Positions 7,875 through 62,916 of a stretch of DNA of 64,000 bases are shown here, piece after piece. Each line of letters starts with the position of its first letter. Within the stretch, counting starts at the first letter, position 1. The translations under genes were made by a program, and so were the position numbers. The notes beneath the pieces are model-generated. The model was given only the letters and a program-made list of their open reading frames with translations. It was not told the DNA's origin and searched no databases. Where the stretch lies: NCBI RefSeq assembly GCF_037042905.1, contig NC_087246.1:23064001-23128000 (forward strand), in the 5' to 3' direction. The stretch comes from Lytechinus pictus (taxonomy: Eukaryota).

Positions 7875-8071
7875 CACCCTAAAAACAGAGAGTGCAAAGT
7901 TACCCAATATTGGATAGAAAGTGAACAGGCATGTTTGCTGGGTAATTTTTCCCCAATATTAAATTTCAACGGGACATTGCGTAAAATTTACAAAATATTT
8001 AGTATGTTTTTACCCAACGAACAAGCATGTTCCCATTTTACCCAATATTGGGTACAACTTTTTTTAGAGTG
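7875..8071 (+). mobile_element. MITE with CAC...GTG ends and 2-bp TSD (CMC/EnSpm-like), family A
   Basis: Ends CACCCTAAAAA / TTTTTAGAGTG; AG on both flanks; internal TACCCAATATTGG repeats; homologous to 61633-61834 and 62738-62916. Confidence 0.8.
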
Positions 8072-8199: not shown

Positions 8200-8823
8200 T
8201 ACCGTGTGAGTAAAAAGAAAATTGACATCTCATAAATCCATAATTCAAGGAAAAAATATTCCATCAACAAATAATAATTATATAGAGCTGGAAAGAATAT
8301 TATCTCCAAAATAATTTGAAACCACATTTATGTGGTATGTCTACAGGCTTGGATAATCAGTAGGTGTTATTTGCAATGATGAAGGTTTTGATTTGTGCCA
8401 AGTAAGGTGAGATGACTGCAATGGATGAATCCAGATGCCAATGATGTCGTAATCCTACATGAACTTAAGGATTTATACTAAAAAGTGTTAATTAAACAGT
8501 TATAACATGTATAATGTAAAATATTGAAAAGGTGTTTTGAAATGGATTTTAAATGTAACCCTTATAGGATTATGACATCATTGACATCTGAATTCATTCA
8601 TTGCAGTCATGCATGCTTGACTTTGGCACAAATCAAGCTTTACATCACTGCAACGAACACCTCCTGATCATCAAAGCGTTAAGACTTACAACATAAATAT
8701 GGTATCAAATTATTTGGGAGAACAAAACTCTTTCAGGCCATATAATAATTATGTGTTCTCGACATGTGTTTTCTTAGATTGGGGATTTATGATGTGTCAA
8801 TGTTTGTTTTACTCACACGGGTA
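8200..8823. mobile_element. Long foldback MITE (~260-bp imperfect arms), possibly Tc1/mariner-derived
   Basis: Left arm TACCGTGTGAGTAAAAAGAAAATTGACATCTCATAAATCC... pairs with right arm ...GGATTTATGATGTGTCAATGTTTGTTTTACTCACACGGGTA; arms remain alignable inward to ~8460 and ~8563; TA at the ends. Confidence 0.85.
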
Positions 8824-15021: not shown

Positions 15022-16300
15022 GTCATTGTTACTTATCTTTGTTTTTGGAATGTATACTTGGATGCTATATATTCTATTCATTCGTTAAATTGTGATTAAC
15101 TTTATGTCCATCTTTAAGAAACACCAATTAGGAATATGGAACTAGCACTCTATCACCTGGGAGTCAAATGTATCTGGTCAATTTAAAAAACGGGTTAATA
15201 TTACATATCGATACATTACAAAATCAAGCTGACTTCATACAAATCAACTTCCATCCATGTCCTATAGCAGGCTGCCACTGTGAATTTCATTTCGTTATTC
15301 CCTAAGATGGAAAATGAGAAGGATGTCTGAAATCTGCTCTCGGCGTCACCAAGACGTTCTATTCCCCGCATCACGCGCTCCCTGAGGGGCACAACGCATC
15401 GATTTTTACCTCTTTGATCCCCCTGGCCTTTAACCCCCGCCACAAAATCTGTTCTGAGTGTGCTCGTTGGAAATTTATGCTTGGGAGCACGTTTTCATTT
15501 ACTTGTTTAGCCTGTAAAATCTTATCATATCGTGACTATTGAAGGTTAAAGTTAAGGAACTGAAACTTCAAATTGAGCGGAAATCTAAGGGAAGATAGTT
15601 CGCTGAGTCGATGTTAAGTGGTAAATTCAAAACCAATTACCCCAAAAGAGTGTTTGACCAATAGTTATGGCGATGGTGTCCAATGTTAAAGTCTGAAATG
15701 AGAGACATTGCGAATTACAACTATAGAACCTTGCAGTAAATGGAAATCGACAATAAAACTATATAATCAAGAATCTTTCTATTAGCTTTTGAATAGCATA
15801 GGTCAGTTTCAAATAGTATGATTAACTAACTTTGAAATGAACGTTGGAGGCAATTTCGCCATACGGATAAGACGGATGGAAAGCTATAGTATCAAAATAT
15901 AGAAATGAGATGTTCAATCAATGAAAAATTGGTATCCAAGGCTCAGGTGATTATGTTCATTGCCATTCGCAGTTGGATTTGAGGATGGGTGGAAGGTCGC
16001 CCTTCGGAAATTTACTCTCAAATCCCACTTCAGATAAATCGAGCATTATCACTGATTTTGGATGACATCCTAAAAAGAGTTGGCACTGATTTATGATTTT
16101 AATGCTTTCCTTAAAAGCTGAACTTCCAGCTATTTCTTCAATATTTATATAATGTAGAACGTATTTACATTTTACTAAAAGAAAACAAAATATAAATACG
16201 CCCTCTCTGATGATGTTAAAATATGAAATATCATACAAAAACAAAAACAAAAATTGTCATTGTTAAAGTAAGGCATTCTTTTATTTTCCGCAGCATATAT

Positions 16301-16350
16301 GGGTGATTTCAAGTCCGATGTTGGCGTTGGTGTTGGAATGTTGATTGTTC
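16301..16350 (+). mobile_element. Truncated left end of the MITE family at 41531/41766
   Basis: GGGTGATTTCAAGTCCGATGTTGGCGTTGGTGTTGGAAT nearly identical to the left ends of those two copies. Confidence 0.75.
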
Positions 16351-27805: not shown

Positions 27806-28038
27806 CAGGTGGGTGTTTCATAAAGCTGTTCGTAAGTTAAAAGCAACTTTAAGAACGACTGGCGATCCTTTCTTAGGTAAATGTTGTACACCTAAATCAA
27901 AAAAAGATACATACTAATTAGTATATACATCTCTATGACCTAAATGTTCACTGGCAATGGTTTAGCGCATAAGAAAGGTTCACAAGTCGATCTCAAAGTC
28001 GCTCTTACTTACGAAAAGATTTTTGAAACACCCACCTG
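27806..28038. mobile_element. Palindromic MITE (PIF/Harbinger-like), ~70-bp imperfect TIRs
   Basis: CAGGTGGGTGTTTCATAAAGCTGTTCGTAAGT...CCTTTCTTA vs TAAGAAAGG...ACTTACGAAAAGATTTTTGAAACACCCACCTG. Confidence 0.85.
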
Positions 28039-41448: not shown

Positions 41449-41530
41449 TCACTCCAGATTGACCAACGCTATATTGCGTTATTTCCAATGACCTATCATC
41501 GGTCGGTTTCGTTGGTGTGACTGCTGCATT

Positions 41531-41745
41531 GGGTGATTTCAAGTCCGGTGTTAGCGTTGGCGTTGGAATTTGGATTGCTCCCCTAGCTCCAAAACCTATT
41601 CTGAATTTGTAAAACTGATCCAGATCACATCTCAACAACTATAATGAGTTACTTTTCAATCTTCATTTTATGTTTGATGTTATACTCGTGTAAAAATTGA
41701 CCTAACACCAACATCAAAAGTTCAACACTGAATTTGAAATCACCC
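41531..41745 (+). mobile_element. MITE, GGGTGATTTCAA family, copy 1
   Basis: TIR GGGTGATTTCAA / TTGAAATCACCC; homologous along its length to 41766-41993. Confidence 0.85.
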
Positions 41746-41765
41746 ATTGAGCCAGACCCGACCCT

Positions 41766-41993
41766 GGGTGATTTCACGTCCGATGTTGGTGTTGTGTTGA
41801 AATTTGGATTGCTTCCCCTAGCTCCAAAACCTATTCTGAGTTTGTAAAACTGATCTAGATCACACTATTGACATCTCAACAACATGTGAGTGACTTTTCA
41901 GTACCATCTTCATTTTTTTGTTTGGTGTTATACTCGTGTAAAAATTGACCTAACACCAACACCAAAAGGTCAACACTAAACTTGAAATCACCC
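41766..41993 (+). mobile_element. MITE, GGGTGATTTCAA family, copy 2 (tandem)
   Basis: TIR GGGTGATTTCA / TGAAATCACCC; CTG at both boundaries; shares CCCTAGCTCCAAAACCTATTCTGA and TACTCGTGTAAAAATTGACCTAACACCAAC with copy 1. Confidence 0.85.
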
Positions 41994-43041: not shown

Positions 43042-43204
43042 NNNNNNNNNNNNNNNNNNNNNNNNNNNNNNNNNNNNNNNNNNNNNNNNNNNNNNNNNNN
43101 NNNNNNNNNNNNNNNNNNNNNNNNNNNNNNNNNNNNNNNNNNNNNNNNNNNNNNNNNNNNNNNNNNNNNNNNNNNNNNNNNNNNNNNNNNNNNNNNNNNN
43201 NNNN
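43042..43204. other. Assembly gap (163 N)
   Basis: Run of N. Confidence 1.
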
Positions 43205-45229: not shown

Positions 45230-45511
45230 ATATTTTGTATGAAAATTATCTATTGCAAACCAGGTGGTTTCTTTACAAAGAGTACGGGAATAACATACTC
45301 CAGTAGTCAAAGGGTTAATCTCTCTGATCACAAGAGGGTGTCCACGAGGGGAATCGTTTCATATCTACTACTGATAGCGATATAATGGAGAAGTGATTTC
45401 AAAAGACAAGGCACAACTACGTCTGATGCTGAAGGATCCAACGGGCACATTGATTAATTACATGCACTACCAACCTTTTATTGTAGGAATTGTATACATG
45501 GTATACATGGT

Positions 45512-45872
45512 GGAAGAGCCGTGGTGTAGTGGTTCTGACTCTCGCCTTGTAAACAGAGGGTCGTGTGTTCGAATCCCACCGCGGTCTAGCGTCCTTTGGC
45601 AAGGCGTTAATCCACACTTTGCCACTCTCGACCCAGGTGCTAAATGGGTACCCGGTAGGATGCGAAAGATATTGTATGTTTGATTTTGCCAGCGCCATAA
45701 TGAGGCTGCGATGAATGCAAGGAATGCTCCCCAGGGAGTGGAAACTGTGCACTTTTCGTGCGGGATTGAAATGAATCCAATGACCAGGGTAATAATATGC
45801 TGTAACGCGCTTTGAGCCATTCTGGGAAAAGCGCTTTATAAAAATTGGCTATTATTATAAAAATTGGCCATT
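45512..45872 (+). mobile_element. Full-length tRNA-derived SINE with CORE-like centre and L2-like tail
   Basis: A-box TGGTGTAGTGG (45522), B-box GTTCGAATCCC (45567); centre GTCCTTTGGCAAGGCGTTAATCC...AAATGGG resembles the MIR/CORE domain; tail TGTAACGCGCTTTGAG...AAAAGCGCTTTATAAAAATTGGCTATTATT resembles L2/MIR 3' ends; possible TSD ATGGT (45507 and 45873). Confidence 0.9.
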
Positions 45873-46982
45873 ATGGTATAGCTAACGCATGGAGATGTTC
45901 TTCCTTATAGAGCACAACCTCTGACTTGCGATGACCACCTATTTTTATTTATCTTACTGAATGAACAGATTCTCAGCATATCTTTTAAAAAATTGAAGTC
46001 AAGGAAAACAATACGTGGAGAGGGATTGAAACAGAAGAACCCACTAGCCGATTCCCTAATTCCCACGATCTAATCAATTGAAAAGTACGGCGAGCTCTTA
46101 TTTCATGTCAAACATTTGAGAGAACCCAGTGCTTCATGTGCCCTCCTGAATGTTCTCACTTTCAGGGGAGGCTCCAGATTCTCTTAATAAAAGGAGGTGT
46201 TGTAATCATTACGGAAATACATGTAGGCATACATGCTCTCTGACCTTCTGGGTATTCTCAATTGTCTTCTTTAATGCACCTATTCTCGTAACAGTATATT
46301 GAATGTCAAATTTAAAATGACTAGCGGCTCTTTATTTATGCTACTGGTGTCGCATAATGTAAAACACATCTATTCTCGTTGAATGTTACCCCTTCCGTTC
46401 ACCCCTCTTCCAAAATCTGAATGGCCCCAGGGTCCACGGTCTCATTCAAAGCGGGGTAGTATACCGTTTCACACACGTACATCGGATTAAAGAATGATGT
46501 TAATTAAGCAATGCTGAAAAGCCTAGATTTATACGACGAAAGGATAGGTCCAGACGGTGTAAACATAGATCCGGCTGACGGCCAAAAAGGCGGAAATTAG
46601 GAAGGAAGAACTAGGTTAGGCGCATGTTCCAGGGTGCAATCATTTACTCCGTAAATTGGCAACTCTCGCTGGGTATCATGCGCGGGAAAGAATGCTTGTA
46701 TGTTGGTGATCAGCACGTAAATGTATATCTGAGTTAGGATAAATGTGAGGGAAATGTGACATCTCCTGGCAGATTTCATCCGTAGAAATCAGTAAATCGT
46801 GCCGTTTCGCCTGTTATGGAGATCAATAACCAAAATGGATAATGAAGAGGACAAATAAGTGTAGTACGGCCTACGACAGCAGGTTGATGCATATTTATAG
46901 TGTTGTAAAGTAAATTATAATGCATATTTTGTCATGTTTGTTGTTAGAATTGTTAATGTACCGAGTTTTGAAGCAGTATTAT

Positions 46983-47448
46983 GGTGTCACGCGCGTAAAA
47001 CATTCCCCATAGACTTGTGTGTTAGAATGGCACTTTTGAAAAATTCATAAAAAATAAATGTGAAATTAGAGGGTGTAATGTTTACTACCAATGGATAGGA
47101 TATATATCTGACGTTCCAAATCTGACCAGGAAAGGGTACCGTAGCCAGCTCATTTTAAAAATAAATCGCCATTTGTGAAGATAACTATGAATCGATCGAA
47201 TTCATCAACTGGAGCAGTAAAATAGCCCTAATTATTCCGCCAGTCAAAAAATAGTTCCAAGTCACTTATTTATCTTCCCAATTTGGGCAAAGTAAGTTCA
47301 GTAGTTACCATTTCTAGAATCAGTGTTAGATTTTGAATCACATTCATACATTTTTGTCAATCAGCAATATCAAATTGACAAAAATTCGAATGGGTTGGGT
47401 CGAACGAATATCTTTAGCCCTCCTGATGTAATTAGGCTCGTGGAACCT
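46983..47448 (+). mobile_element. ~465-bp non-autonomous DNA element, copy 1
   Basis: Imperfect TIRs GGTGTCACGCGCGTAA / TTAGGCTCGTGGAACC; differs from copy 2 by only two substitutions and one A indel by my alignment. Confidence 0.9.
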
Positions 47449-48421
47449 ATATTATATGACCTATGTATTTTATTTTTTTGAATAGCTACTTTGCTATTCT
47501 TTTATATCTGTACACTCACACTAGCACAAAGAAATGCATTGAAAATTCCTATTTTCTATGCAATGACCCATTTTAATGTGTTACCCATACATGTTATTTT
47601 CACTATATATGGATGTATACAAATCCTACCTGCATAAAGACCAACAGTGAATGCAATGACAATATAGGTCCCTATCAATTGTAATATAAAGGTGTATGTA
47701 AATTCTGTGTAGATATCAGGATACCAGAACTGCCCCAAACATAATTACCAAATATACATGAGATTGGATGAGGAAGCAATAAAAGAATGACATACTACTT
47801 TAGTATATTTGCATTTCCTAGGGCTGTTGTCTCTCAGATGTAAGAAGGAAGAGATACATAAATAGAGAGAGAGAAAGAGAAGGAGAGAGAGAGAAAGAAA
47901 AATAATTTTATAGATGGCATGGCCTAATAAAGAGAGGGGGGGGGCTATTCTAAGATTGCAGCACACAGCCACCCCCCCTCCCTCCTTAGTTGAGCACTAT
48001 TAGATACCTTACCTTACTCTGTACCCTTTTCTAAATACCTTCTTGAAGGTACCACTCTAGTTCTCTTCAGTAAAGTTCTCAAAGTTCTATCTCCTCTCTA
48101 CCTACCCCCTTCCTAAGAACAATTTTAACATGAGCAATTTCTACAGGTCTTTCTAATGCTAAGTAGGTGATGTACACTAACACAAATCAATGATAAATCA
48201 GAACATAAAGAGGCCTTGACTATATACATTGACCAGTCTACATACATTCCTAGGCTACACAGACCTACTAACTTTACCTGATGTAGCCCTGCTAGCCATT
48301 AAATCAATTTTTTTGCACCACTTGATGACTAAACATATTGATATCAGTGAGAAATTGTTTGCTACTGAAGAGTTTGGCCAGGTATTCCATCCACTACTAG
48401 GGATTTCCCATATTACTTACA

Positions 48422-48886
48422 GGTGTCACGCGCGTAAAACATTCCCCATAGACTTGTGTGCTAGAATGGCACTTTTGAAAAATTCATAAAAAATAAATGT
48501 GAAATTAGAGGGTGTAATGTTTACTACCAATGGATAGGATATATATCTGACGTTCCAAATCTGACCAGGAAAGGGTACCGTAGCCAGCTCATTTTAAAAT
48601 AAATCGCCATTTATGAAGATAACTATGAATCGATCGAATTCATCAACTGGAGCAGTAAAATAGCCCTAATTATTCCGCCAGTCAAAAAATAGTTCCAAGT
48701 CACTTATTTATCTTCCCAATTTGGGCAAAGTAAGTTCAGTAGTTACCATTTCTAGAATCAGTGTTAGATTTTGAATCACATTCATACATTTTTGTCAATC
48801 AGCAATATCAAATTGACAAAAATTCGAATGGGTTGGGTCGAACGAATATCTTTAGCCCTCCTGATGTAATTAGGCTCGTGGAACCT
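48422..48886 (+). mobile_element. ~465-bp non-autonomous DNA element, copy 2 (direct repeat of copy 1)
   Basis: Same sequence as 46983-47448 (~99% identical), different flanks. Confidence 0.9.
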
Positions 48887-51749
48887 TATTATGAGAGGAA
48901 GATGGGCTAAGATGAAAACTGGTGAGAAAGCTTAAGAGGAAGGATAACATGTACTGAGAGAGGTATTAAGCAAGAGAGAGAGAGGAAGGGGGGGGGTGAA
49001 AGAAGTGACGGGGAGTACTGAAAACAGAGCTGAGTAGCCTTGCCATTATCATTGTCATCACCCTGCGTATTTGAGTAGCACGCTTTACATTCAATAACGA
49101 ACGCCCATCCATCAATATGATTAATGTACTATGTGTGGTTGACAACTTGTAGGGCTCACAGTTACGGCTCATAACCATCCAATAACAAAAAGAGCTTCTA
49201 TTCAAGTTCTATCCAAATTTTTATACACACACACAAACCCACCCTCACCCTCACCCTTAAGCTCCCACGCACACAAATCATTATTCATCCGTGTGAATTA
49301 TTGTCCGCTGAACAAGTCAAATCTCGTAGTTTACTAGGGTAATTTAGCGGAAAATTGTTGAACGTAAACGAAATAGTACATAGGCCTACCATAGAATAGT
49401 TAAAGCCGACATGCTGGAACACACTGCTTTTTCATTGCAAATTCGTTCATGAATAAAGAGGCTTAAATAATCATGTACTGATTATGAACCAAGGATCCAT
49501 GTGATGTAAACGATTTGGGGGGGGGGGGGGGATTTTGTCCACAAATTTAAACAAGTCATGCAGGTATAGACTTTGATTCTCATGAACAAGTTTTAAGCTT
49601 TACCTAACACTATTATGACCCGACAGTGCTCATACAATATCATTGTCACTGAGGAAATATTTAATAATGTAATTTCCATTGGGTGATTGAGACGCGTGCA
49701 TTTTATCAATGAATCATGCAATATCGACTCATAAAAGACTTCTCTTACGAAAAACAATCTGGACGCGTCCGATTGTCAGGCATGCGATTGATTATGATTT
49801 TCTTCATTTTTTAATTTTTTTTTCTTTACAATACACGCATTTATAGGCGAATTCCGAAATTTGTGCCACAGCCTATGAGACAAGTTTGTCTTGTCCCCTT
49901 TAAAAAGACAAGAAATCAAAAGAAATCGTCGAGTATGTACACGTCCGCTCATCAGAGATGACCGGTTTGAAAAAAAGCGAAGTAAAAAAAATCATGACAA
50001 TAAACCATTATGACACAATATTATTCGATAGTTGGCTTTGCTACAATCAAGAACCACCCGAAAACGAGTGAGTTAATGGGAATAATAAATGTATATTTCA
50101 TTCCTAATCTACTTCAAACATTCAATCTTTCCACGGAGATGATTGAAAGGAAATAGTTTGAACCCTTCTCTTGATGTACTATCGTCCGTAGATATGAACT
50201 GATTATTACAGTCGGAATGATTAGATATACTTCAGCCCTGTACTTCGTAGAAACATAACACACACAAGAGATAGAAACGGGTCACGCTATGCCCACAACG
50301 CTTTTTGGCATAAATATTTAATTAAAAGTAGACTATCCGACTAGCAGACTATAGAAGCAAGGTCAATGATATTCTCCGTAAGGTGATGTGCTATATCAAT
50401 TAGGACGGAAGATCGTCATTTAATTCTCATCTATAAAGTACATGAAACGAACTAATCTATGATTTCATGGACAAGCTTTCTCAAGAGAACACTTCATTTC
50501 TGCAGTCCTCTCCGAATACCCTCATATTTTAATCATTATCAACTATCTTTTCGATTATGAATCTGACAAAGTAATGATCAATTGCCTCAAGCAATGTGTA
50601 AATTTGACACAACAGTTAATTGTTTGCGTACAACTCGTGAATGTGGGATTATGTAATTATGAATGTTTGCGGAAAATCTTGTATCGATCTCTTCGACTTT
50701 GAAAGTTACTTTTACATCACGTCGTTTTGAAAGAGCTCAAAGCCGTCGGTACCCTAGTTTCCTACTTTTTAAAAAATAAAAATACTTGAGAATAACAAGG
50801 AAACATGTTCAAATTCATTAATTGCCCAACAATATGTGTGGACTCTCTCTGATTGAGTGTTATGTATAGCTAGTCTAAAATATACCTTTTGAGACAATAC
50901 ATACATGTACATAATTATATTAGCCTATAATTTGCATGTGAAAGCAAAGGAGAGGAAAGGTACTTGTTTTGCTAATTGGTAGTTGTGCTATGAATGTGTT
51001 GAATAGTGAATTACAATGAAGTATGATAATAATTCAAGCCCGCCCGTACCCCGGTACAAGACAACATTGCTTAGCATGATGCATTATGGGTTAGGGACTT
51101 GGCCAGATTTGACTAGTTTTTTTAATAAAAAGACACAAAAAGAGAAAAAAAGAGGGTGCTATATGCTGAATTGAAATTCTAACGGCTGATAACACATTCA
51201 ATGACCACTGCACTTGTGTAATATTGAAATGATTTGATTTGATTAATTTTAATTGTTTTCTTCTGCATTCATATCAATCCGAATAAAATATTTAGATATA
51301 TTTCAGCGTGGAATGTTATACAATACTCGAGTATAATTCACATTACCGGTTAGTTATCATAGCTTAGATGGGCTTTAAACTTAATATTTAGTACTTTTAA
51401 ATAATTTATATTTGGTATTGAAATGTCAATGTACTTTTTTCTGGGGCGTGTTTCAAAAAGCCGTTCGTAATGTTACGCATCACTTCAGGAAGGATACGGC
51501 AAGCAACTTAGGCGTATTAATCAGTTTAGATTGAACTAGGTCAAGTTGATATATGCGAAAATGTTATCTAATAATGATTCCATTCAGACACACTTTTTAA
51601 GTAATATGATGTAACATCGTAGATGAATTTCACACTTCAGAAATGCGGTCGGATATTATTTTGGCGCTTAAATCCCGGTCGCTAATAAACAAAAATGCGT
51701 AAATTGACGAAGGGTTTTTTGAAGCATATCCACGATAGAATTTCCTTTT

Positions 51750-52718: not shown

Positions 52719-52957
52719 ACCGGCCATGGTGGCCCAGTGGTAGAGCGTCCGCCTCATGAACGGGAGGTCGTGGGTTCGATCCTCGGCCGAGTCATACCAA
52801 AGACTTATAAAAATGGGACCTTCTGCCTTCTTGCTTTGCGCTTAGCATTTAGATTGGAGTAGGGTAATACTAACATATTATGTTATGCAGGGCCCCCTGG
52901 AAGAGCAGTCTTATGATCGAAGTGGCTACCCTGGGTAAATAAAATTTATTATTAATA
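52719..52957 (+). mobile_element. Full-length tRNA-derived SINE with Meta-domain-like centre
   Basis: A-box TGGCCCAGTGG (52730), B-box GGTTCGATCC (52773), anticodon-like loop CTCATGA; centre GTCATACCAAAGACTTATAAAAATGGGACCTTCTGCCTTCTTGCTTTGCGCTTAGCATTTA resembles the MetaSINE domain as I recall it; TSD AATAGG at 52713 and 52958. Confidence 0.9.
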
Positions 52958-58702: not shown

Positions 58703-59205
58703 GAACACACTGCGAACACACTATAAACACAATGTGAACATAGTACAAACATACTGCGGACACACAACAAAACACTGTGATTACACTGCAAACACAATAT
58801 GCACACCGCAAGCACACTGTGAAGACACTGCTGTCAACACACAACAAATACATCATGAGCACACTACAAACACACACTGGGAACACACTACAAACACACA
58901 CTGGGAACACACTACAAACACACCCTGAACACACTGCAACACACTGTGAGCACAAGGCAGCCCACCGTAAATGCACTCTGAACACACTACAACTGTGGAC
59001 ACATTGCAAACACACTGTGAACACACTACAAACGCATTGTGAATACACTAAAACACACTCTGAACACAATGCAAAACACCTTGAACACAGTAAACAAACT
59101 GCACACACTACAACAGTAATACAATACAAACACACTGTGAATTCACCGCAAACGCACTGTAAACACATTAGAAACACGTGTGAGCACACTGCAAACACAC
59201 TGTGA
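58703..59205. repeat. CA-rich minisatellite (~11-12-bp unit AACACACTGCA/AACACACTGTG, ~22-24-bp higher-order repeat)
   Basis: Dozens of degenerate ACACACT units; ACACTACAAACACACACTGGGAAC is perfectly duplicated from 58861; explains the ORFs at 58662-59258. Confidence 0.9.
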
Positions 59206-59949
59206 TCAAAATAGAAACAAAGTGAAAAACACATACCACGGAAAACGCGTTCAGACAATGTCTTTTTGGGGGTTGGTAAGACAAATAATTCACTAGAGAC
59301 GTTTTGTAATCAATACTCATTCATGATTATCACTGATTTGACTTTAATCTTAAATTAAACCTCAAGTTATACATTCAACAAATCATAATTCAACACGATA
59401 TGATTCCAGTTAATGAATAGTCAACAATTTTGCATAAACAAGATATATTCTGAAAGAATAATTTTCATAAAATTATATTATACTGTCCATCGATGATATA
59501 CGTATTTTCAACAATGCTATTCACATTTTGGAATCACTTGCATCAAAATGAGCGTATTCTAGTTTCTATATATAATTTTGTTGCAATTGACATTTAAATT
59601 CAGATTCGGTAGAGCCCTGTTGATTTCGACTAAATGCTGGAACAGCATCGTTCAGATTTAAATAAATCCTTATATTGTCTTTATTGATCTTCACATGACA
59701 TTAAACATAGAGTTATAAACACTATTGGATTACCACATCAAATCCGTTTAGCCATGTTAGTAATTAAGACTGGTCTCTGTTTTTATTTGAAATTCAATTA
59801 AGGATATGTTGGGTTCTGCAGTCTTTCAACATGAGGCGTTCGTTGTCTGCTGCTCGGCCATTCCTTATCATAACCCAAGCTACTCGTGCATTTATCCCCA
59901 AATTAAGAAACAGATAATTCCATTCATTTCTTTAAAACCGAAACAGATT

Positions 59950-61632: not shown

Positions 61633-61834
61633 CATCTAAAAAAAAGTTTACCCAATATTGGGTAAAATGGGAACATGTATGTTTGTTGGGTAAAAAGATA
61701 CCAAAGATTTTGTAAATTTTACGCAATGATGCATTGAAAATTACCCTTAAAACATGCATTGGGGTTACCTAGCAAACATGCATGTTCCCTTTCTACCCAA
61801 TATTGGGTAATTTTTTAATCAATGTTTTAATGTG
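61633..61834 (-). mobile_element. Family A MITE, opposite orientation
   Basis: Reverse complement of the 7875 and 62738 elements (TTTACCCAATATTGGGTAAAATGGGAACATG...); TA on both flanks. Confidence 0.8.
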
Positions 61835-62737: not shown

Positions 62738-62916
62738 CACTCTAAAAACACTGAGTAAAATTTTACCCAATATTGGATAGAAAGGGAACATGCATGTTTG
62801 ATGGGTATTTTTTTTATCTCATATTGGGCTATTTCAACGCAACATTGCGTAAAATTTACCAAACCAGCATGCATGTTCCCATTTTACCCAATATTGGGTA
62901 AACCTTTTTTAGAGTG
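62738..62916 (+). mobile_element. Family A MITE with 2-bp TSD (TT)
   Basis: CACTCTAAAAA / TTTTTAGAGTG perfect ends; TT on both flanks. Confidence 0.85.

What the first reader, a model, noticed from the sequence alone, without database searches (positions are those of the whole stretch)
46977..48892. Candidate composite transposon: twin ~465-bp TIR elements bracketing ~970 bp of cargo
Seen: two direct copies (46983-47448, 48422-48886) differing by only ~3 positions, 973 bp apart, while other repeat families in the window are much more diverged. Each copy has imperfect TIRs (GGTGTCACGCGCGTAA / TTAGGCTCGTGGAACC). TATTAT lies immediately left of copy 1 (46977-46982) and immediately right of copy 2 (48887-48892); copy 2 has no TSD of its own. 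Known: bacterial composite transposons move cargo between two IS copies. Inference: the 1.9-kb unit arrived in one event, either by compound transposition or by a circle carrying one element recombining into a resident copy. Caveats: the flanks are AT-rich, the TATTAT reading is one base asymmetric relative to the TIRs, and copy 1 alone can be read with a TAT/TAT TSD.
Basis: partly seen in the sequence, partly recalled or inferred. Interest (0 to 1): 0.75.

Follow-up and report, generated by a model that had tools for sequence, protein, structure and literature searches.

The report
Known sea-urchin KolobokP composite-like transposon copy

Summary
Two direct copies (46983-47447 and 48422-48885) differ by 2 transitions and 1 A-run indel. 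Each has a 16-nt imperfect TIR (GG...CC), and they lie 974 bp apart. Neither the repeats nor the spacer occurs elsewhere in the window.

A literature search led to Kojima & Bao 2022 (PMC9587614). They describe KolobokP, a Kolobok-superfamily DNA transposon lineage built as LTDR-INT-LTDR. LTDR means long terminal direct repeat, about 450 bp, each with its own TIR of 11-18 bp.

Their Table S1 gives this family a full length of 1904 bp, LTDRs of 465/464 bp, a 16-bp TIR and a 4-bp TSD. It counts 313 LTDR copies and 156 INT copies in L. pictus. The window copy is 1903 bp with LTDRs of 465/464 bp. It is flanked by a perfect 4-bp TSD, TTAT.

The composite-like, single-unit reading therefore holds. 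However, the middle is the family's own deleted internal region rather than captured cargo, and the family is already described. LTR-retrotransposon hallmarks are absent. Interest is low. One small open point is that both LTDRs share about 3% differences from the published consensus yet differ from each other by only 0.4%.

The parts
46979..46982 (.). Left target-site duplication, TTAT
   Evidence: Read directly from the sequence. It matches 48886-48889. The family's TSD length is 4 in Table S1 of PMC9587614.
46983..47447 (+). Left long terminal direct repeat (LTDR-L), 465 bp. Its own TIRs are at 46983-46998 and 47432-47447.
   Evidence: Repeat pair. TIR 12/16, P about 2.4e-4. Matches the KolobokP-N2_LyPi-LTDR consensus text of 465 bp. 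Termini are GG...CC, i.e. RR...YY.
47350..47385 (.). Hairpin-forming palindrome inside LTDR-L, with a 12-bp perfect stem. The same feature lies at 48788-48823 in LTDR-R.
   Evidence: the repeat finder I1. DNA fold gives -10.5 kcal/mol, z = -5.0, and 0 of 200 shuffles fold as well. Its role is unknown; a protein-binding site is only a guess.
47448..48421 (+). Internal region (INT), 974 bp, non-coding. It contains a GA-rich tract (about 47840-47900) and a G9...C7 inverted repeat (about 47936-47978).
   Evidence: Starts TATATTATATGACC and ends CCCATATTACTTACA, as KolobokP-N2_LyPi-I does. Four of six internal 12-14-mers were found in the consensus file, all four in that consensus and in order. No ORF with a Pfam hit. 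Only sub-threshold miRNA-like Rfam hits, all on the G/C hairpin.
48422..48885 (+). Right long terminal direct repeat (LTDR-R), 464 bp. Its TIRs are at 48422-48437 and 48870-48885.
   Evidence: 99.4% identical to LTDR-L. Table S1 lists LTDR lengths of 465/464 for this family.
48886..48889 (.). Right target-site duplication, TTAT
   Evidence: Read directly from the sequence.

Best explanation
Window 46983-48885 is one monomeric copy, in + orientation, of KolobokP-N2_LyPi. This is a non-autonomous member of the KolobokP lineage of Kolobok-superfamily cut-and-paste DNA transposons, described from the painted sea urchin Lytechinus pictus. The window therefore most likely comes from that species or a close relative (inferred).

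The element has the lineage's LTDR-INT-LTDR plan. Two 465/464-bp non-coding direct repeats, each ending in its own 16-bp imperfect TIR, flank a 974-bp non-coding remnant of the internal region. [quoted passage not shown]

The copy encodes nothing, so it must be moved in trans. The most likely route (inferred, not shown) is that a transposase from an autonomous KolobokP acted on the outer TIR of LTDR-L and the outer TIR of LTDR-R. It would then have inserted the 1.9-kb unit into ...AAGCAGTA-TTAT-TATGAGAGG..., duplicating TTAT.

What is shown here is the architecture, the termini, the TSD, the absence of coding capacity and the sequence match to the published consensus. What rests on the paper's analysis of other copies and species is the family's Kolobok affiliation, its copy numbers and its TSD length.
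For: - Two direct repeats with TIRs and a 974-bp spacer.
- A perfect 4-bp TSD, TTAT, abuts both outer ends, with chance about 0.005.
- K-mers from the repeat hit only the Lytechinus pictus KolobokP LTDR consensus sequences in the paper's Data S1. The full consensus text is collinear with the window repeat.
- Four of six k-mers from the spacer were found in Data S1, and all four hit KolobokP-N2_LyPi-I. Its first and last 30-40 nt equal the spacer's ends.
- Table S1 gives full length 1904, LTDR 465/464, TSD 4, TIR 16, and copies of LTDR 313 and INT 156. The window has 1903, 465/464, 4 and 16.
- The paper's lineage definition is LTDR of about 450 or 660 bp, TIR of 11-18 bp, termini RR...YY, non-autonomous families of 1738-3261 bp, and presence in Echinoidea.
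- By eye, the INT ends of N2 resemble those of the autonomous KolobokP-1_LyPi-I.
- The window is eukaryotic, 36% GC and without Alu. It carries a tRNA-derived SINE of marine-invertebrate type (the type assignment is from memory).
Against: - Percent identity to the consensus could not be computed. The consensus exists only as machine-read PDF text with no reference, and that text doubles letters in homopolymer runs.
- By eye the LTDRs differ from the consensus by roughly 3%. INT carries an approximately 18-nt deletion and a longer GA tract. The copy may therefore belong to a subfamily or to a sister species.
- No other copy, empty site or autonomous partner could be examined, because none of the searchable collections holds this genome.
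- Whether this copy arrived by outer-end transposition or was built in place cannot be told from one locus.
Confidence: 0.93

Rival explanations
1. The family is the same, but this copy was assembled in place. A solo LTDR first inserted at TTAT. Later an extrachromosomal circle (one LTDR plus INT, like an IS26 translocatable unit) recombined into it, or an unequal crossover or nuclease-induced repair resized a multimer. The result is LTDR-INT-LTDR with the old TSD unchanged.
For: The paper proposes exactly these routes and notes that they leave TSDs unaltered. Solo LTDRs are about as common as complete copies (313 LTDR copies against 156 INT copies). The two LTDRs are nearly identical to each other while both differ from the consensus, as expected if both derive from one template (by-eye comparison, note).
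Against: Nothing in the locus distinguishes this route from direct transposition. The 465/464 length difference equals the family's own left/right figure, which suggests that both LTDRs were inherited as a pair.
Confidence: 0.2
2. [quoted passage not shown]
For: Near-identical direct terminal repeats, a short non-coding interior and a TSD of 4-6 bp are also the plan of a TRIM. TRIMs are known in marine invertebrates.
Against: The repeats begin GG and end CC in both orientations, not TG...CA. There is no TGG-initiated primer-binding site next to the 5' repeat: none within 30 nt in + orientation, and 11 nt away and AT-rich in - orientation. The 15 nt before the 3' repeat are only 33% or 60% purine. 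Each repeat has a 16-nt TIR. The autonomous relatives encode a DDD/E transposase, not a reverse transcriptase.
Confidence: 0.01
3. This is an opportunistic composite. Two independent insertions of a 465-bp MITE happened to bracket host DNA, and the pair then moved once as a macrotransposon.
For: Macrotransposition by paired elements is documented for Ac/Ds in maize. The inner junctions carry no TSD that matches the outer one.
Against: The spacer equals the catalogued internal region of a 156-copy family from first to last base. Its ends resemble those of the autonomous element's interior. It is therefore not locus-specific host DNA.
Confidence: 0.02
4. The structure is an assembly artefact. 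The repeat graph flank-LTDR-INT-LTDR-flank fits any (LTDR-INT)n-LTDR, so the true allele could be a solo LTDR or a multimer that the assembler threaded as n=1.
For: The window is a scaffold with an N gap at 43042-43204. The paper warns that multimers are common and often poorly assembled.
Against: All four junctions are present without gaps. The two LTDRs carry distinct variants. The monomer length matches the family's.
Confidence: 0.06

Closest known systems
KolobokP-N2_LyPi (Kojima & Bao 2022, Mob DNA 13:24, PMC9587614)
   Same: The LTDR and INT sequences match. The length is 1903 against 1904 bp. LTDRs are 465/464 bp, the TIR is 16 bp, the termini are GG...CC, the TSD is 4 bp, and the element is non-coding.
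   Different: By eye, both LTDRs share about 3% substitutions against the consensus. INT has an approximately 18-nt deletion and a longer GA microsatellite. The copy may be a subfamily variant or come from a sister species.
Bacterial composite and pseudo-compound transposons (Tn5/Tn10 type; IS26 translocatable units)
   Same: Two TIR-bounded repeats flank an interior, the outer ends define the unit, a single TSD flanks the whole, and a circle of one repeat plus the interior is a discussed intermediate.
   Different: Here the flanking repeats encode nothing. In autonomous relatives the transposase sits in the interior. The architecture is a stable lineage trait across 7 animal phyla rather than an opportunistic assembly. 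The host is eukaryotic.
TRIM/LARD non-autonomous LTR retrotransposons
   Same: Direct terminal repeats, a short non-coding interior, a short TSD, and the occurrence of solo repeats and tandem multimers in the family.
   Different: There is no TG...CA, PBS or PPT. The repeats carry long TIRs. The element moves as DNA through a DDD/E transposase.
Ac/Ds macrotransposons of maize (alternative transposition)
   Same: The termini of two separate TIR units act together to move everything between them.
   Different: Macrotransposons are one-off events carrying host DNA. Here the pairing is the family's normal form.

Membership tests
KolobokP (Kolobok superfamily DNA transposons) | LTDR-INT-LTDR architecture with direct long terminal repeats | tested here: met
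   Direct repeats at 46983-47447 and 48422-48885 around a 974-bp interior.
KolobokP (Kolobok superfamily DNA transposons) | LTDR length of about 450 bp or about 660 bp | tested here: met
   465 and 464 bp.
KolobokP (Kolobok superfamily DNA transposons) | Each LTDR carries its own short (11-18 bp) perfect or imperfect TIR, with termini 5'-RR...YY-3' | tested here: met
   16-nt TIR with 12/16 matches, P about 2.4e-4. Termini are GG...CC.
KolobokP (Kolobok superfamily DNA transposons) | A TSD of 3-5 bp flanks the whole unit (4 bp for the L. pictus families) | tested here: met
   TTAT/TTAT abuts both ends, with chance about 0.005. Table S1 gives TSD 4.
KolobokP-N2_LyPi (the specific family) | Sequence match of both LTDR and INT to the published consensus | tested here: met
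   K-mer look-ups and line-by-line reading of Data S1. This is qualitative only. Percent identity was not computed, because the consensus has no reference and the text is machine-read.
KolobokP (Kolobok superfamily DNA transposons) | DDD/E transposase of Kolobok type plus a His-Me finger nuclease in INT (autonomous members) | tested here: not met
   No ORF longer than 89 codons and no Pfam hit in the unit. This is expected for an 'N' (non-autonomous) family and does not count against membership. The autonomous partner is not in the window.
LTR retrotransposon / TRIM | LTR termini TG...CA | tested here: not met
   GG...CC in either orientation.
LTR retrotransposon / TRIM | tRNA primer-binding site next to the 5' LTR and a polypurine tract next to the 3' LTR | tested here: not met
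   No adjacent TGG. Purine fraction of the last 15 nt is 0.33 (+ orientation) or 0.60 (- orientation).
Retrozyme / Penelope-like pLTR element | Hammerhead ribozyme in the terminal repeats | tested here: not met
   The Rfam scan of 46500-49400 at E up to 10 lists only weak miRNA-like hits on the G/C hairpin of INT.
Bacterial-type composite transposon | Flanking units are autonomous insertion sequences encoding the transposase | tested here: not met
   The LTDRs have no ORF with a family match.

The most novel reading that the evidence does not exclude
Both LTDRs of this copy share roughly a dozen substitutions against the published family consensus, yet they differ from each other by only two. 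If that pattern holds across the family's roughly 156 complete copies, the two LTDRs of a KolobokP element are regularly regenerated or homogenised from one template. Possible routes are a one-LTDR circular intermediate or nuclease-induced repair. This would make KolobokP a DNA transposon whose terminal repeats evolve in concert as LTRs do, and it would give direct genomic support to the circle/homing-nuclease model that the describing paper left as speculation.
Probability: 0.15. Interest if true: 0.45.

Novelty: already known. Interest (0 to 1): 0.12.

Why it matters
The main value is as a resolved call. The locus adds one well-preserved, TSD-flanked monomer and corrects the TSD to 4 bp.

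The only point that could repay further work is the left/right LTDR identity pattern. Studied genome-wide, it could show whether KolobokP ends are copied from a single template.

Tried and rejected
- **Searching for other copies:**
  - Exact-pattern scans of viral contigs with three parts of the repeat gave 0 hits.
  - A metagenome scan with the left 19-mer gave 2 hits. Both are bare 19-mer chance matches in GC-rich (54-61%) contigs.
  - A protein word search with the 89-codon frame across the INT/LTDR-R junction found nothing.
  - The searchable collections therefore do not hold this genome. I ran no further search on spurious ORFs.
- **Paralogous empty site in the window:** none found for either flank or for the reconstructed empty site.
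- **Coding capacity:** ten stop-to-stop frames from the unit and its right flank have no credible Pfam match.
- **Structured RNA or hammerhead:** none found.
- **LTR retrotransposon:** rejected on termini, PBS and PPT.
- **Helitron or Helentron (considered from memory of their A|T or T|T insertion sites and lack of a TSD):** rejected, because LTDR-R is preceded by A, the ends are GG/CC and a TSD is present.
- **Tandem duplication or satellite of period 1438 bp:** rejected, because the sequence after LTDR-R is unrelated to the start of INT beyond T-TATTAT.
- **Human origin:** rejected, with no Alu motifs at up to 3 mismatches and a match to a sea-urchin transposon family.
- **Step not done:** I did not align the window to the consensus in a script. 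The consensus exists only as text in a paper supplement and has no reference, so I did not paste it.
Full report
**Observation**

Reading 46700-49200, together with repeat finding, blastn of the parts against the whole window and a pairwise alignment with 30-nt flanks, confirms two direct copies of a roughly 465-bp sequence. They differ by two transitions and one A5/A4 run indel. Neither the repeat nor the spacer has any other copy in the 64 kb. All other repeat pairs in the window are 71-94% identical.

The repeat's ends form a 16-nt imperfect inverted repeat, GGTGTCACGCGCGTAA / GGTTCCACGAGCCTAA, with 12/16 matches. A match that good at fixed ends 465 bp apart occurs at a frequency of 2.4e-4 in this window.

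The window is eukaryotic non-coding DNA:
- GC content is 36%.
- Only nine ORFs of 120 or more codons are present.
- Rfam reports one tRNA-like hit.
- There are no Alu motifs.
- A tRNA-derived SINE lies at about 45505-45860, with a tail I recognise from memory as a marine-invertebrate type.
- One N gap lies at 43042-43204. I left it alone.

**First attempts at identification**

Nothing in the unit codes for protein. The longest stop-to-stop frame is 89 codons, and ten frames gave no credible Pfam hit. Rfam at E up to 10 shows only sub-threshold miRNA-like hits on a G9...C7 hairpin in the spacer, and no hammerhead.

Looking for further copies in the collections failed:
- Three exact-pattern scans of viral contigs were empty.
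- The one metagenome scan returned two 19-mer chance matches in GC-rich contigs.
- A protein word search with the junction-spanning frame returned nothing.
- Neither flank has a paralogue in the window that could serve as an empty site.

LTR-retrotransposon hallmarks are absent in both orientations. The ends are GG...CC, there is no adjacent TGG primer-binding site, and there is no polypurine tract.

**Identification**

A literature search for miniature terminal-repeat elements in marine invertebrates returned Kojima & Bao 2022 (PMC9587614). The paper describes KolobokP, a lineage of Kolobok-superfamily DNA transposons found in seven animal phyla, including Echinoidea. Its architecture is LTDR-INT-LTDR, with these features:
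- Long terminal direct repeats of about 450 or about 660 bp, each carrying its own 11-18-bp TIR.
- Termini 5'-RR...YY-3'.
- TSDs of 3-5 bp.
- Non-autonomous families of 1738-3261 bp.

Looking up 11-14-mers from the window repeat in the paper's supplementary consensus file hit only the Lytechinus pictus LTDRs. The printed KolobokP-N2_LyPi-LTDR (465 bp) is collinear with the window repeat from GG...CACGCGCGTAAAA to ...TAATTAGGCTCGTGG.ACC.

Four of six k-mers from the spacer were found in that file, and all four hit KolobokP-N2_LyPi-I. That consensus begins tatattatatgacctatgtattttattttttt... and ends ...ccatccactactagggtattcccatattacttaca. These are the spacer's own first and last bases.

The family's published figures and the window copy compare as follows (Table S1; window values):

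| Feature | KolobokP-N2_LyPi, Table S1 | Window copy |
|---|---|---|
| Full length | 1904 bp | 1903 bp |
| LTDR lengths | 465/464 bp | 465 (left) / 464 (right) bp |
| TIR | 16 bp | 16 bp |
| TSD | 4 bp | 4 bp (TTAT) |
| Copies in assembly UCSD_Lpic_2.0 | 313 LTDR, 156 INT | not applicable |

**Revised anatomy**

Using the consensus boundaries, the parts are:
- LTDR-L: 46983-47447.
- INT: 47448-48421.
- LTDR-R: 48422-48885.
- Flanking tetranucleotides: TTAT at 46979-46982 and TTAT at 48886-48889.

This is a perfect 4-bp TSD abutting both ends, with a chance of about 0.005 in this window. The extra TA on the left and TAT on the right are simply AT-rich flank.

**Is the middle cargo?**

It is not. 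It is the family's internal region, catalogued in 156 copies. By eye, its first roughly 150 nt and last roughly 100 nt resemble the corresponding ends of the interior of the autonomous KolobokP-1_LyPi, which is 4984 bp with LTDRs of 466/467 bp. N2 is therefore best read as an internally deleted derivative of an autonomous KolobokP that has lost the transposase and the His-Me finger nuclease genes.

**Mechanism**

The locus shows a non-coding unit with two TIR-bounded direct repeats and one 4-bp TSD. From this I infer mobilisation in trans by a KolobokP DDD/E transposase acting on the two outermost TIRs.

The paper adds three points from analysis of other families:
- Single LTDRs can also be excised.
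- Solo LTDRs and (LTDR-INT)n-LTDR multimers are common.
- A circle of one LTDR plus INT entering a solo LTDR, or nuclease-induced unequal crossover, could rebuild or multiply units without changing the TSD.

I give it about 0.2. The assembly caveat is that the true n of (LTDR-INT)n may differ from 1. It remains open, because the paper notes that multimers are poorly assembled and this window is a gapped scaffold.

**An open point**

I compared the two window LTDRs line by line with the printed consensus. I ignored homopolymer-run lengths, because the machine-read text inflates them: it has 474 letters for a 465-bp sequence.

On that basis, roughly 12-15 substitutions are shared by both window LTDRs against the consensus. 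Only two substitutions are private, one in each LTDR, and in each case the other LTDR keeps the consensus base. The excess of shared over private differences means that the left and right repeats were homogenised, or copied from one template, somewhere in this copy's ancestry. Alternatively, the window comes from a subfamily or sister species whose founder already had matched LTDRs.

Against regular regeneration, the family's left and right LTDR lengths differ by one base (465/464), and this copy shows the same 465/464. One copy cannot settle this (note).

Each LTDR also holds a hairpin with a 12-bp perfect stem (47350-47385 and 48788-48823), with a DNA fold z-score of -5.0. Its role is unknown.

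**Limits**

The consensus sequences exist only as text inside a paper supplement and have no reference. I therefore did not paste them into a script, and no percent identity is given. The match rests on k-mer look-ups and on reading the sequences side by side. The species assignment (Lytechinus pictus or a near relative) is inferred from the family match alone.

**Verdict**

The feature is real and was accurately observed. Its interpretation as a composite-like single unit is right in form. However, it is a catalogued copy of a published family, so it is already known and of low interest.

Noticed in passing
window 45505-45873: A tRNA-derived SINE. It has a tRNA-like head at about 45505-45580 and a tail '...GCGCTTTGAGCC...AAAGCGCTTTATAAAAAT', which I recognise from memory as a type common in marine invertebrates. 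It ends in a 19-bp tandem duplication (45836-45854 / 45855-45873). Spurious ORFs of 111 and 117 codons run across it on the minus strand.
   Followed up: partly
window 52723-52794: A tRNA-like sequence just above the Rfam gathering score (30.4 against 29 bits) that ARAGORN did not call. It is followed by an A/T-rich tail, so it is probably another SINE head rather than a working tRNA gene.
   Followed up: partly
window 8202-8820 and 27806-28038: Two stretches that match their own reverse complement over their whole length (72% identity over 640 nt and 244 nt). They look like foldback or long-TIR elements.
   Followed up: no
window 7875-8071, 61639-61828, 62738-62916: Three copies (74-80% identical, in mixed orientation) of a repeat family of about 190 bp. 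GA-rich tracts like the one in INT lie next to some of them.
   Followed up: no
window 41530-41993 and 16300-16350: A tandem pair of units of about 230 bp (85% identical), with a 51-nt relative at 16300-16350.
   Followed up: no
window 58704-59219: A degenerate CA-rich minisatellite with periods of 11, 22 and about 120 bp. It produces the window's longest spurious ORFs on both strands, of 198 and 142 codons.
   Followed up: no
window 47916-48001: A G9...C7 inverted repeat inside INT draws several sub-threshold miRNA-family hits (best 23.5 bits against a gathering score of 100). The same G-run/C-run pair is in the published INT consensus, so it is a family feature and not evidence of a miRNA.
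   Followed up: partly
PMC9587614 Data S1, KolobokP-N1_LyPi-I (not in the window): The printed interior of the sister family N1 contains an INT-end/INT-start junction in its middle ('...cgctgtattacc|tatatattatgacc...'). It therefore looks like two N2-like INT units joined without an LTDR, the INT-INT form that the paper ascribes to LTDR excision.
   Followed up: no
window 43042-43204: An assembly gap of 163 N. I left it as it is.
   Followed up: no
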